DNA from: Gekko japonicus
Taxonomy: Eukaryota
DNA: 64,000 nt
NCBI RefSeq assembly: GCF_001447785.1
Contig: NW_015164664.1
Coordinates: forward strand, 425,924 to 489,923
Direction of reading: 5' to 3'
The number at the start of each line of letters is the position of its first letter. The first letter of the stretch is position 1. The position numbers and the translations under genes are program-made. The notes beneath the pieces are model-generated. The model had not been told where the DNA came from. It made no database searches and saw only the letters and a list, made by a program, of their open reading frames with translations. Below, in pieces: positions 50,901 through 53,900 of the stretch.

Positions 50901-53900
50901 ATGACCTGCGCGTACTATGCAGCCATCACTGAAACCAAGGTGAAGAAACGGCACGTCATCGACCCGTTCAGTGGTAAGAGCTTCTGCTCCCCCCTTGCAG
51001 CCTGCACAGGGTTTTACAGACAGGGCTGATTTGCCTTTCTTGAAGCTTTCTGCTTACAGTTGCTGCATCTCATCTGGTGCTTGTTGGCATTTCCTCCCCC
51101 TTTTGCCAGGATGAGGCCAGCTTGTGCCTCTAGCGTTGCAGCTTGGTCCCTGAGTCCGCAGCTTGACATGGCATCCAGCACCTCACTTTCTTTACTCTTC
51201 CCACCATGTCGCAAGGGTCAGTGTGCTTGGCTCCCCACTTCCTCAGGTCCTACCTTTCTCCTTTCCCCCTCCCTTCCCCTTCTGCTAATGGTTGTTCTTC
51301 CTTCCAGAGTGGACCCAGATTATCACCAAGTATTTGTGGGAGCAGCTGCAGAAGATTGCCGAGTTCTATCGGCAGTTGTTGGGGCAAGCCACTGGGTCTC
51401 CCTCGGGTCCCATGCCCCAGGAGGTAGAGCATGCTCTGAAGCAGTGGGACTACAATGAAAAGCTAGCAATGTTCATGTTCCAGGTGAGATGGAGAGGAAA
51501 GGGGAAAGAAGTCTGTTTTCTTTAGCACGGCTGATGCATAGATGGAGAGGAAAGGGGAAAGAAGTCTGCTTTCTTTAGCAAGGCTGAATTTAGTCTTCTC
51601 CTGTGTGGGAGATGAGTCCAAAGGAGCCAGCACAAATTGGCTGCCTTCTCTCTGCTCAGCTCTTCCCATCTGCTTCCAGGATGGGATGCTGGACCGGCAT
51701 GAGTTCCTGACTTGGGTGCTTGAGTGCTTTGAGAAGATTCGGCCCGGAGAGGATGAACTTCTGAAGCTTCTCTTGCCCCTGTTGCTGCAGGTGAGCCTGA
51801 CTCTTCTGCTGTAGTCAAAACCTTCTCTTGATTTTATGGTGGAAGAGACGGTTTTTGCCCTGTGGATACTCTGGACAGCTCTGCCTGTGCTAAGTTAGTT
51901 TGGGCCAAGAGAGTGTCCTAACTTGGCACTGAACTGATTTATTTTCTCTCTTCCCAACAGTATTCTGGGGAGTTTGTGCAGTCTGCCTACTTGTCCAGGC
52001 GCTTGGCCTACTTCTGCACCCGGCGGCTTGCCTTGTTGCTGGATGGCCCTGGTGGGCACCCTCCCCACCATCTCTCTGCACAAGCGGGCAATGCGCTCCC
52101 TTCCACACCTACCCCTCAACCTGCTGTGGGGAACCCACCCCCCAGCCCTTTTAGTGACCTCCTTCTGTGCCCCCAGCACCGCCCGGTGGTGTTTGGGCTC
52201 AGCTGCATACTCCAGGCAANNNNNNNNNNNNNNNNNNNNNNNNNNNNNNNNNNNNNNNNNNNNNNNNNNNNNNNNCATGTATGCTGTCCTAGGAAGTTTA
52301 GACTTAAGCAAAATAAGGTTAACAGGAAACTGCCACCAAATGTTGGGTTTAGGACAGGTCCACAAAGATCTATACTTTGTCTGGTATGATAATTTTAGCA
52401 GAGTGGCTAAAGTGAAGTAGGACTTCTTGCCGAGTGAGCTAGCATGGTGGGTATGTTACAGACAGTCAAGAGGAGCACACTTTCCTTCCTGGAGCAGTTA
52501 GGGAGGACTGGGAAATGGATGTGAAATCTATATGTGGATGGGAGGGAGGGAGGGAGGGCGGAGAGATAGATAAGTCTTGCTGACTTTCCGGAATTCAGGC
52601 TTGAGTGTGCTCAGTGTTTCTGCTTTTTCTGCAGAGTATTGTCCTGTGTTGCCCAAGTGCCCTGGTCTGGCATTACTCCCTCACTGACAGCAGAATCAAG
52701 ACTGGCTCTCCACTTGACCACCTGCCCATTGCCCCTTCCAACTTGCCCATGCCTGGGGCCAATTCAGCTTTCATGCAGCAAGTAAGCAGCAGGAGTCAGA
52801 ACCTCATGTCCGTCTCTAGTCCTGTGGCAAGTAGAGCTGCAAGAGATTCATGCCAGCCTCACCCCCATCATCCTTCATAGCTTCTTGAGCATTCTTGCAA
52901 AGGCAGGATGCTTGAAAGATACAGCCTCTCACACTGTCTCTCTTGTGTTGCTTCTTTGTCAGGTCCGAGCCAAGCTCCGGGAGATTGAGCAACAGATAAA
53001 AGAGCGGGGCCAGGCAGTGGAGGTGCGATGGTCCTTTGACAAATGCCAAGAAACCACTGCAGGTAGACCCTGTAGAAGAGCTCTTACCCTGGCTCGTTGT
53101 GTGGCTATTCCCTCAAAGGTTTTAGAAGGAAAATATAGAAAGATACCATATGAAGACAGGTGCTGCCCATGCTCTGTGGGAGACGTGGAATCAATGTTCC
53201 ACATGTTCTTTTGCTGTCCTTTTCATCAGGTTTATAGGGATAAGCTTATTGCCCCCCTCTGGGTTAGATCAGCACTTGATGCAGATAGTGCTGATCTAGA
53301 GAGACTTTTAATAGAGGAAAATCAGCAGATCTCCAGACAAATAGCAAAATTCTGCTTGCAGTTGGTAAAATTTCACAATAAGAAACAGATCAAGTAGAAT
53401 CCTCATTTACTTTTGCATGACTCATAAGTAGTTTAGTTTTAAACATCTTATAATTATTTTGATATAATGGACTGTTAAACTTTTCTCCTTTTAACATTTT
53501 AATGATTTTAAGGTTATATGTTTATTTTTAGAGCTGAAAGCTAATTTGCTTGTATTTAACGAACATGTAATGTTTTGATAAATGGTCTTTGACCGCAAAT
53601 AAACATCATTCATTCACTGCAGGTAGTACACAATGATTTTGCCCACGCACCTTTCCAAGGTTGATCTCCTATTATCCCTGCTTCCTCTTTCCTCTTTCTG
53701 ATATTGTTCATGCAAGCCTGTCTCTCATTCTCCTTGTCTTTTGTAGCAACCAGCTCTTCTTTATGCTCTCTAGGCAGCCTGGTTGTCTTTTCTTCTGCCT
53801 GGGGAATGTTCTGCTCTTTACCTCTGGGTCTGATATTGTTTTCTTGTTCCACTCCAGGATTCACAATTGGCCGGGTGCTGCACACTTTGGAGGTCCTAGA

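What the first reader, a model, noticed from the sequence alone, without database searches (positions are those of the whole stretch)
53055..53626. LINE inserted into the MED12 exon 9 splice donor: duplicated donor plus an in-frame potential terminal exon with its own poly(A) signal
Seen: the 12-bp TSD CACTGCAG|GTAG covers the last 8 exonic and first 4 intronic bases. There are now two donors identical from -8 to +4: CAG|GTAGAC at 53062/3 and the original context CAG|GTAGTA at 53622/3. Both lack +5G and look weak. The LINE is in sense orientation and in frame. Exon 9 reads on for 111 uninterrupted codons through a CCHC zinc-knuckle domain to TAG 53395-53397, then an AT-rich UTR and AATAAA at 53598-53603. 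Inference, three possible outcomes: (a) normal splicing at the proximal donor; (b) use of the distal donor, giving a stop-containing extended exon that should trigger NMD and lower MED12 dose; (c) intronic polyadenylation, giving a ~559-aa chimera (448 aa MED12 + 111 aa LINE-derived). Established: the MED12 N-terminus (exons 1-2) binds cyclin C-CDK8 and activates the kinase, so the chimera would keep that function but lose the LCEWAV motif (exon 11) and everything downstream.
Basis: partly seen in the sequence, partly recalled or inferred. Interest (0 to 1): 0.8.

Follow-up and report, generated by a model that had tools for sequence, protein, structure and literature searches.

The report
LINE sitting on MED12 exon-9 donor
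A young, truncated jumping gene (LINE) landed exactly on a splice site of the essential lizard gene MED12, but its insertion duplicated that splice site and the available RNA data show the gene is still spliced normally, so it is a tolerated intronic passenger and not a new gene product.

Summary
A 548-bp, 5'-truncated, sense-oriented LINE (53067-53614) is flanked by a perfect 12-bp duplication, CACTGCAGGTAG. The duplication spans the last 8 bases of MED12 exon 9 and the first 4 of intron 9, so there are two equally weak donors, at 53062/3 and 53622/3. Exon 9 reads in frame through 111 codons to the LINE's own stop codon, and one AATAAA lies at 53598.

The insert's peptide matches the extreme C-terminus of lizard endonuclease-plus-reverse-transcriptase proteins. 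It is therefore a real non-LTR element. It is probably not of the L1 clade, because it has no poly-A tail.

DNA contigs from a second, SNP-distinct sample cross the 5' junction with 35 letters of LINE and reach 28 letters across the 3' junction. No empty site was seen, so the insertion is not an assembly artefact.

A 2.5-kb transcript contig (depth 144) and two raw reads join 53062 to 53858. No distal-donor junction, exon-to-LINE read-through, unique-intron coverage or poly(A) end was seen. Raw-read depth was low, and the RNA animals' genotype at this site is unproven.

Verdict: an ordinary intronic LINE, tolerated because the duplication rebuilt the donor. It is a neat natural splice-site experiment of low to moderate interest. 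The scan also noted a second, unchecked LINE-on-donor case (SCARF1) in this genome.

The parts
52635..52781 (+). MED12 exon 8
   Evidence: Has an AG acceptor and a GTAAGC donor. The joint 52781>52963 is seen in the RNA contig and in raw reads.
52963..53062 (+). MED12 exon 9 (100 nt, ends in codon phase 1)
   Evidence: 32/33 residues identical to human MED12 417-449. Hits Pfam Med12-LCEWAV. Joints are seen on both sides.
53055..53066 (+). Upstream copy of the target-site duplication, CACTGCAGGTAG. It carries the donor that is used (CAG|GTAGAC, cut 53062/53063).
   Evidence: The RNA joint is listed as 53059>53855 'cut +3', which equals 53062>53858.
53067..53614 (+). 5'-truncated non-LTR retrotransposon (LINE) 3' end, in sense orientation
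   Evidence: It is bounded by the 12-bp TSD. Its peptide is homologous to the C-terminus of endonuclease + RVT_1 proteins. In DNA run X2 the depth is 7,000-25,000, against 38-66 in the flanks.
53065..53397 (+). Reading frame continuous with exon 9: 110 LINE ORF2 C-terminal codons plus the native TAG stop (53395-53397)
   Evidence: Relatives end at the same position.
53164..53217 (+). CCHC zinc-knuckle-like motif of the ORF2 C-terminus (C34-x-C36-x9-H46-x4-C51 of the 110-aa piece)
   Evidence: Pfam zf-RVT, E 3.4e-4, 21.6 bits, below the 27.5-bit cutoff. C34 and H46 are invariant in alignment A1.
53398..53614 (+). AT-rich LINE 3'UTR. It ends AATAAACATCATTCATT, with no poly-A tail.
   Evidence: The fold is no better than shuffles, z = -0.42.
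53598..53603 (+). AATAAA, the only canonical poly(A) signal in intron 9
   Evidence: No read ends or poly(A) loose ends were found near it.
53615..53626 (+). Downstream copy of the target-site duplication. It carries the unused duplicate donor (CAG|GTAGTA, 53622/53623).
   Evidence: No joint from 53622 was found in any run.
53627..53857 (+). Remainder of the original intron 9. The ancestral intron was about 235 nt and is now 795 nt.
   Evidence: RNA depth is zero in all three RNA runs.
53858..53994 (+). MED12 exon 10
   Evidence: 41/45 residues identical to human MED12 451-495. Joints are seen on both sides.
54370..54501 (+). MED12 exon 11, with the LCEWAV motif
   Evidence: The joint 53994>54370 is seen.

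Best explanation
A recently active squamate non-LTR retrotransposon inserted by target-primed reverse transcription into MED12. It has an APE-type endonuclease and a reverse transcriptase, and it is probably of the CR1/L2 kind and not L1.

The bottom-strand nick fell 8 nt before the end of exon 9. The top-strand nick fell 4 nt into intron 9. Filling in the staggered nicks duplicated 12 bp, which rebuilt positions -8 to +4 of the splice donor directly after the intact exon.

The spliceosome uses this upstream copy. That copy keeps the 100-nt exon and its exonic signals. The 548-bp LINE, the duplicate donor and the old intron are removed together as a 795-nt intron, and MED12 mRNA and protein are unchanged.

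The open frame through 111 codons is simply the LINE's own ORF2 tail, which happened to land in phase (chance 1 in 3). The LINE's poly(A) signal is not detectably used.

What is shown: the anatomy, the LINE homology, the presence of the insertion in a second haplotype, and the dominant 53062>53858 junction.

What is inferred: the order of the nicks, the reason the upstream donor is chosen (exon definition), and suppression of the poly(A) signal by U1 snRNP bound at the two donors (telescripting, or the HIV-1 5' LTR type of effect).
For: - TSD and insert boundaries are confirmed.
- The insert peptide has 153 relatives at E<=1e-3. The long ones (993-1113 aa) match it at their extreme C-terminus and carry Exo_endo_phos + RVT_1. 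Named cluster members come from the lizards Podarcis and Hemicordylus. The CCHC columns and the stop position are shared.
- DNA of a second sample, X2: a 732-nt contig covers 52560-53101 and a 339-nt contig covers 53587-53921, so both junctions are reached. SNPs at 52795, 53636, 53664 and 53790 show a different haplotype. No 560-bp skip (empty site) was found.
- RNA: the X4 contig (2545 nt, depth 144) joins exons 8-9-10-11 using 53062>53858, and X21 has 2 reads for the same joint.
- X4 depth in bin 53029-53095 is 66.7, which is exactly 31/67 of 144.1. Nothing therefore continues from exon 9 into the LINE.
- In X4, depth is zero over 53364-53832. No poly(A) loose ends were seen.
Against: - Raw-read depth at the exon 9 junctions is only 2 reads in X21 and 0 in X23. 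The tool warns that conserved exons lose reads to its human filter, and a 100-nt exon with 100-nt reads is hard to lay.
- Contigs drop rare variants, so a minor isoform of a few per cent, or one restricted to a tissue, is not excluded.
- No unique-intron reads show that the RNA-run animals carry the insertion. If it is polymorphic, they might carry the empty allele.
- X21 has 1-3x depth over parts of the LINE. I attribute this to the hundreds of other copies, but I cannot prove it.
- The 3' junction contig of X2 has only 28 LINE letters, just under the tool's 31-letter bridging rule.
Confidence: 0.8

Rival explanations
1. The downstream duplicate donor (53622/3) is used in a meaningful fraction of transcripts. 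This gives a 660-nt exon 9 with the LINE stop at 53395. The transcript is degraded by NMD and MED12 dosage falls.
For: The two donors are identical from -8 to +4 and score about equally: 4.97 and 4.37 bits, with U1 duplex energies of -8.0 and -8.8 kcal/mol. Classical duplicated-donor experiments (own knowledge) often favour the donor nearer the acceptor. NMD would hide the product from steady-state RNA.
Against: No 53622>53858 joint was seen in any of the three RNA runs. X4 has no contig over 53364-53631, although the MED12 contig has depth 144. A 660-nt internal exon is disfavoured by exon definition in vertebrates (own knowledge). The allele is present in both sampled haplotype sets, which argues against a strong loss of an essential gene's dose.
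Confidence: 0.1
2. Intronic polyadenylation at the LINE's AATAAA produces a short mRNA. It encodes about 449 aa of MED12 fused to 111 LINE-derived residues: a CDK8/cyclin C-binding fragment without the rest of MED12.
For: The frame is open to the native LINE stop. A canonical AATAAA lies at 53598, with a U-rich stretch (GATTTTG) about 30 nt downstream. X21 shows 1-3x depth over parts of the LINE. Sense-oriented LINEs are known to truncate host transcripts in mammals (own knowledge: Perepelitsa-Belancio and Deininger 2003; Han et al. 2004; Wheelan et al. 2005).
Against: No read or contig crosses 53062 into the LINE. No poly(A) loose ends or clustered read ends were seen. X23 and X4 have zero depth on the LINE 3'UTR. 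The X21 LINE reads leave gaps (53297-53363 is empty), and the family has hundreds of near-identical copies that can supply them. A donor 536 nt upstream and another about 20 nt downstream of the signal should suppress it through U1 (inference).
Confidence: 0.06
3. The insertion is an assembly artefact, or a rare private allele, so it has no bearing on the species' MED12.
For: The LINE family is highly repeated, which can mislead assemblers. The best DNA holder may be the sample the assembly came from. The RNA animals' genotype is unknown.
Against: Sample X2 differs from the window at 6 flanking sites. It still has contigs running from unique sequence into both ends of the LINE, and it shows no empty-site joint. 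A perfect TSD at the exact limits of the LINE homology is what a true insertion looks like.
Confidence: 0.04

Closest known systems
Ordinary 5'-truncated intronic LINE insertions of squamates (L2, CR1, RTE/BovB, L1 and R4 are all active in lizards; PMC5389967)
   Same: It is a 5'-truncated copy that keeps its 3' end. It is flanked by a TSD, belongs to a family with hundreds of young copies, and lies in an intron, where it is spliced out.
   Different: The stagger of the two nicks straddles an exon-intron boundary. The TSD therefore contains a splice donor, and the element abuts the exon with no intronic spacer beyond +4.
Sense-oriented L1 'gene-breaking' and premature polyadenylation in mammals (own knowledge: Perepelitsa-Belancio and Deininger 2003; Wheelan et al. 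2005; the A-rich L1 poly(A) signals are mentioned in PMC5381506)
   Same: A sense-oriented LINE with a canonical AATAAA lies inside a host intron and could end host transcripts.
   Different: No truncated host transcript was detected here. The element is not an L1 by tail or by similarity. Its single signal is the element's own terminal one, and it is flanked by two U1-binding donors.
Suppression of a poly(A) site by a nearby 5' splice site (U1 telescripting; the HIV-1 5' LTR poly(A) site silenced by the major splice donor; own knowledge: Ashe et al. 1997; Kaida et al. 2010)
   Same: A poly(A) signal with a donor sequence a short distance downstream, and another upstream, remains unused.
   Different: This is inferred only. 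No experiment or read data here shows that U1 binds the duplicate donor or that it is what silences the signal.
Same-genome scan note s1-831015: a CR1 LINE at the SCARF1 exon-10 donor (unchecked first-reader note)
   Same: A LINE 3' end lies directly on a splice donor of a conserved gene in the same genome.
   Different: In that case the donor is said to be partly built from the LINE tail, not rebuilt by the TSD. I did not examine it.

Membership tests
Non-LTR retrotransposon (LINE) insertion made by target-primed reverse transcription | The coding part is homologous to an ORF2 with endonuclease and reverse transcriptase | tested here: met
   The 110-aa piece matches the extreme C-terminus of 993-1113-aa proteins that carry Exo_endo_phos + RVT_1 (best E-value 4.5e-20, best identity 42%). 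The stop position is shared.
Non-LTR retrotransposon (LINE) insertion made by target-primed reverse transcription | Target-site duplication flanks the element, which is 5'-truncated with an intact 3' end | tested here: met
   A perfect 12-bp TSD is present. The element starts inside ORF2 and runs to the 3'UTR end.
Non-LTR retrotransposon (LINE) insertion made by target-primed reverse transcription | Member of a dispersed repeat family | tested here: met
   Summed contig depth in DNA run X2 is 7,000-25,000 inside the element and 38-66 in the flanks, at >=97% likeness. This is a rough indicator and not a copy number. The window holds no second copy.
L1 clade | Ends with AATAAA followed by a poly-A tail (stated for all vertebrate L1 in PMC5381506); strong ORF2 similarity to L1 ORF2p | tested here: not met
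   AATAAA is present, but the element ends CATCATTCATT with no A-run. The full-length relative P0011 matches human L1 ORF2p only over the RT domain, at 95 bits.
CR1 / L2 clades | Placement within the clade in an RT phylogeny with reference elements; a clade-typical 3' microsatellite or hairpin | not testable with these tools
   No reference CR1 or L2 sequences were on hand. The short (CATT)2-like end and an ORF2 of about 1,000-1,100 aa in relatives are compatible but not diagnostic. The 3'UTR fold is no better than shuffles.
MED12 orthologue (not MED12L or a pseudogene) | High identity to MED12 across consecutive spliced exons, and expressed | tested here: met
   Identity to human MED12 is 32/33 and 41/45 residues. 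Both exons hit Pfam Med12-LCEWAV. A spliced RNA contig spans exons 8-11. No MED12L sequence was compared directly.
TE-derived alternative terminal exon / gene-breaking isoform | Host transcripts that continue from the exon into the element and end at its poly(A) site | tested here: not met
   No exon 9-to-LINE continuity, no poly(A) loose ends and no clustered ends were found in three RNA runs. Depth was limited, so a rare isoform is not excluded.

The most novel reading that the evidence does not exclude
In some tissue or stage not sampled here, for example germline or brain, the LINE's poly(A) signal is used. Carriers then make a roughly 560-aa MED12(1-~449)-LINE zinc-knuckle chimera that still binds and activates cyclin C-CDK8 but cannot join the Mediator. 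That would be a lineage-specific, TE-born regulator of the CDK8 kinase module. Alternatively, the duplicate donor may tune MED12 dose through NMD.
Probability: 0.05. Interest if true: 0.6.

Novelty: new member of a known kind. Interest (0 to 1): 0.25.

Why it matters
This is a clean natural experiment on a splice donor of an essential, dosage-sensitive gene. Preserving only positions -8 to +4 of a weak donor, and moving all native intronic context 560 bp away, still leaves normal splicing dominant. A LINE poly(A) signal 536 nt into the new intron stays silent. The case shows how target-site duplication can rescue a hit that would otherwise be lethal. It offers a ready-made minigene pair (with and without the insert) for studying donor choice and poly(A) suppression in reptiles. 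It does not reveal a new kind of element or gene product.

Tried and rejected
- The word-index protein search with the 110-aa piece found nothing in the 61-192-aa length band.
- The Atlas look-alikes were uninformative apart from one zf-RVT cluster and the generic endonuclease-plus-RT architecture.
- Assigning the LINE to a clade failed for lack of reference CR1/L2 sequences. Two papers gave context but not the tail motif.
- A search for other copies in the window found none.
- The LINE 3'UTR has no structure beyond chance. Rfam found nothing in or near the locus.
- A literature search for earlier cases of a TSD-duplicated donor gave no direct precedent among the 15 papers listed.
- The exon 9 depth dip in raw reads could suggest exon skipping. 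I rejected it as evidence: the tool warns about its human filter on conserved exons, and 100-nt reads on a 100-nt exon always need split placement. The X4 contig includes exon 9.
- I did not compute dN/dS against a family consensus, because I built no consensus of the element.
- I did not search a joined MED12 model. Exons were searched one at a time by reference.
- The N runs were left untouched.

Full report
**1. Observation**

CACTGCAGGTAG occurs at 53055-53066 and again at 53615-53626. It is the only 12-nt direct repeat in 52900-53800. It encloses a 548-bp insert at 53067-53614.

The exon upstream (52963-53062) translates to [33 protein letters not shown]. This is 32/33 identical to human MED12 residues 417-449 in PDB 8tq2_C. 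The next exon (53858-53994) matches residues 451-495 at 41/45. Both hit Pfam Med12-LCEWAV above its cutoff. Exon 8 is 52635-52781. Exon 11 is 54370-54501 and contains LCEWAV.

The duplication covers exon positions -8 to -1 and intron positions +1 to +4. Two donors therefore exist: CAG|GTAGAC at 53062/3 and CAG|GTAGTA at 53622/3. The donors of exons 8, 10 and 11 score 7.8-11.5.

Reading on from exon 9 gives Gly plus 110 codons, then TAG at 53395-53397. AATAAA at 53598 is the only canonical poly(A) signal in the intron.

**2. What the insert is**

Pfam gives only a sub-threshold zf-RVT hit over the Cys/His motif (E 3.4e-4). The word-index search was blank. The exhaustive HMMER search found 153 relatives at E<=1e-3, with best E-value 4.5e-20 and best identity 42%.

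Every long relative (P0005, 993 aa; P0011, 1084 aa; P0043, 1015 aa; P0044, 1113 aa) matches the query at its very C-terminus. These proteins carry Exo_endo_phos/Exo_endo_phos_2 plus RVT_1. Named cluster members come from the lizards Podarcis muralis and Hemicordylus capensis. In alignment A1 the C and H of the motif are invariant and the proteins stop at the same place as the window's frame.

The insert is therefore the last 110 codons, the native stop and the 3'UTR of an APE-type non-LTR retrotransposon, 5'-truncated in the way typical of LINEs.

It is probably not of the L1 clade, for two reasons:
- It ends AATAAACATCATTCATT without a poly-A tail, whereas vertebrate L1s end in AATAAA plus poly-A (PMC5381506).
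- P0011 resembles human L1 ORF2p only over the RT core, at 95 bits.

A CR1- or L2-type element is likely, but I could not test this. The open frame continuous with MED12 is the element's own frame landing in phase, which has a chance of 1 in 3.

**3. Is the insertion real, and how old is it?**

In DNA run X2 a 732-nt contig covers 52560-53101, with 35 letters inside the LINE. A 339-nt contig covers 53587-53921, with 28 LINE letters plus the TSD and intron; this is 3 letters short of the tool's bridging rule. X2 is a different sample from the best holder, X1.

X2 differs from the window at 52795, 53636, 53664, 53790 and 54486, and by a 2-bp insertion at 54514. It is therefore another haplotype. 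No 560-bp skip, which would mark an empty site, was reported.

Inside the LINE the summed depth is 7,000-25,000, against 38-66 in the flanks, at >=97% likeness. Only two positions (53310 and 53409) show alternative letters at >=5%. This copy is therefore nearly identical to a large young family, roughly hundreds of copies, though the tool warns that this depth is not a copy number.

The insertion is real, evolutionarily young, and not private to one haplotype.

**4. What the RNA shows**

Run X4 is marked RNA by guess, but its contig is spliced. It holds a 2545-nt contig of depth 144 that joins 52781>52963, then 53059>53855 (cut +3, which equals 53062>53858), then 53992>54368 (cut +2, which equals 53994>54370). 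Raw RNA run X21 has 2 reads for the 53062>53858 joint.

No run shows 53622>53858. X4's depth in bin 53029-53095 is 66.7, which is exactly 31/67 of 144.1. No X4 contig therefore continues from exon 9 into the LINE. X4 has zero depth from 53364 to 53832, which covers the LINE 3'UTR, the duplicate donor and the old intron. The short X4 contigs at 53280-53340 carry a foreign flank, so they come from other copies.

All three RNA runs have zero depth in the unique intron bins. No poly(A) loose ends or clustered read ends were listed. X21 has 1-3x depth over parts of the LINE, with gaps, in an unstranded library. Given the family's abundance, these reads are most simply from other copies.

The raw-read dip over exon 9 is not evidence of exon skipping. 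The tool warns of its human filter on conserved exons, and 100-nt reads on a 100-nt exon always need split placement.

Caveats:
- Junction counts are tiny.
- Contigs hide rare forms.
- Tissues are unknown.
- Nothing proves that the RNA animals carry the insertion.

**5. Mechanism**

Shown:
- The donor sequence from -8 to +4 was rebuilt next to the intact exon.
- That copy is the one used.
- The LINE is removed within a 795-nt intron. The ancestral intron was about 235 nt.

Inferred:
- The bottom-strand nick fell between 53054 and 53055, and the top-strand nick fell after the position now numbered 53626. The trailing CA of the tail and the start of the TSD may share 2 nt of microhomology.
- The upstream donor wins because it preserves a 100-nt exon (exon definition). 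The alternative would be a 660-nt exon.
- The AATAAA is kept silent by U1 snRNP at the used donor 536 nt upstream (telescripting). It may also be silenced by U1 at the duplicate donor about 20 nt downstream, as in the HIV-1 5' LTR.

**6. Comparison and novelty**

This is an ordinary kind of event, a truncated intronic LINE with a TSD, in an unusual position. I found no direct precedent for a TSD-duplicated donor among the 15 papers listed by one literature search. No new element type, mechanism or gene product is demonstrated.

The scan holds one other, unchecked note of a LINE on a splice donor in this genome (SCARF1, s1-831015). Two cases do not make a pattern.

**7. Verdict**

- Observation: confirmed.
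- Interpretation: partly supported. Only outcome (a) has evidence. Outcomes (b) and (c) remain possible as rare or tissue-restricted events.
- Interest: 0.25.
- Novelty: new member of a known kind.

**Housekeeping**

The N runs were left alone. No consensus of the element was built.

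Noticed in passing
window 53265-53294: A perfect 10-bp inverted repeat, GATCAGCACT...AGTGCTGATC, with a 10-nt loop lies inside the LINE's coding tail (blastn self-hit; sequence). It may be chance or a conserved RNA/DNA hairpin of the family.
   Followed up: no
window 7668-7792 and 17758-17875 (+): Two full-length 5S rRNA matches score above the Rfam gathering score (41.3 and 50.8 bits). In this genic, repeat-rich setting they are more likely 5S-derived SINE heads or 5S pseudogenes than rRNA genes.
   Followed up: no
window 32317-32388 (+): A tRNA-like match sits just above the Rfam gathering score (31.8 bits). It is probably a tRNA-derived SINE head.
   Followed up: no
window 35356-35472 (-): A weak tblastn match (E 0.94, 28% over 39 aa) links the LINE's Cys/His region to the minus strand inside the stretch that another first-reader note (s1-833068) calls an ORF1-only L1 derivative. 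It may be noise, or that element may carry an ORF2-tail remnant on the other strand.
   Followed up: no
window 20605-20706, 22024-22128, 32905-32960, 52220-52275: Four N runs of 56-105 bases are present. The last lies upstream of MED12 exon 8. All were left as they are.
   Followed up: no
window 52962-53095, RNA runs X21 and X23: Raw-read depth over exon 9 is about ten times lower than over exon 8 in X21, and zero in X23. I take this as technical (human-likeness filter; 100-nt exon with 100-nt reads). Frameshifting exon 9 skipping (52781>53858) could not be excluded with the single call allowed.
   Followed up: partly
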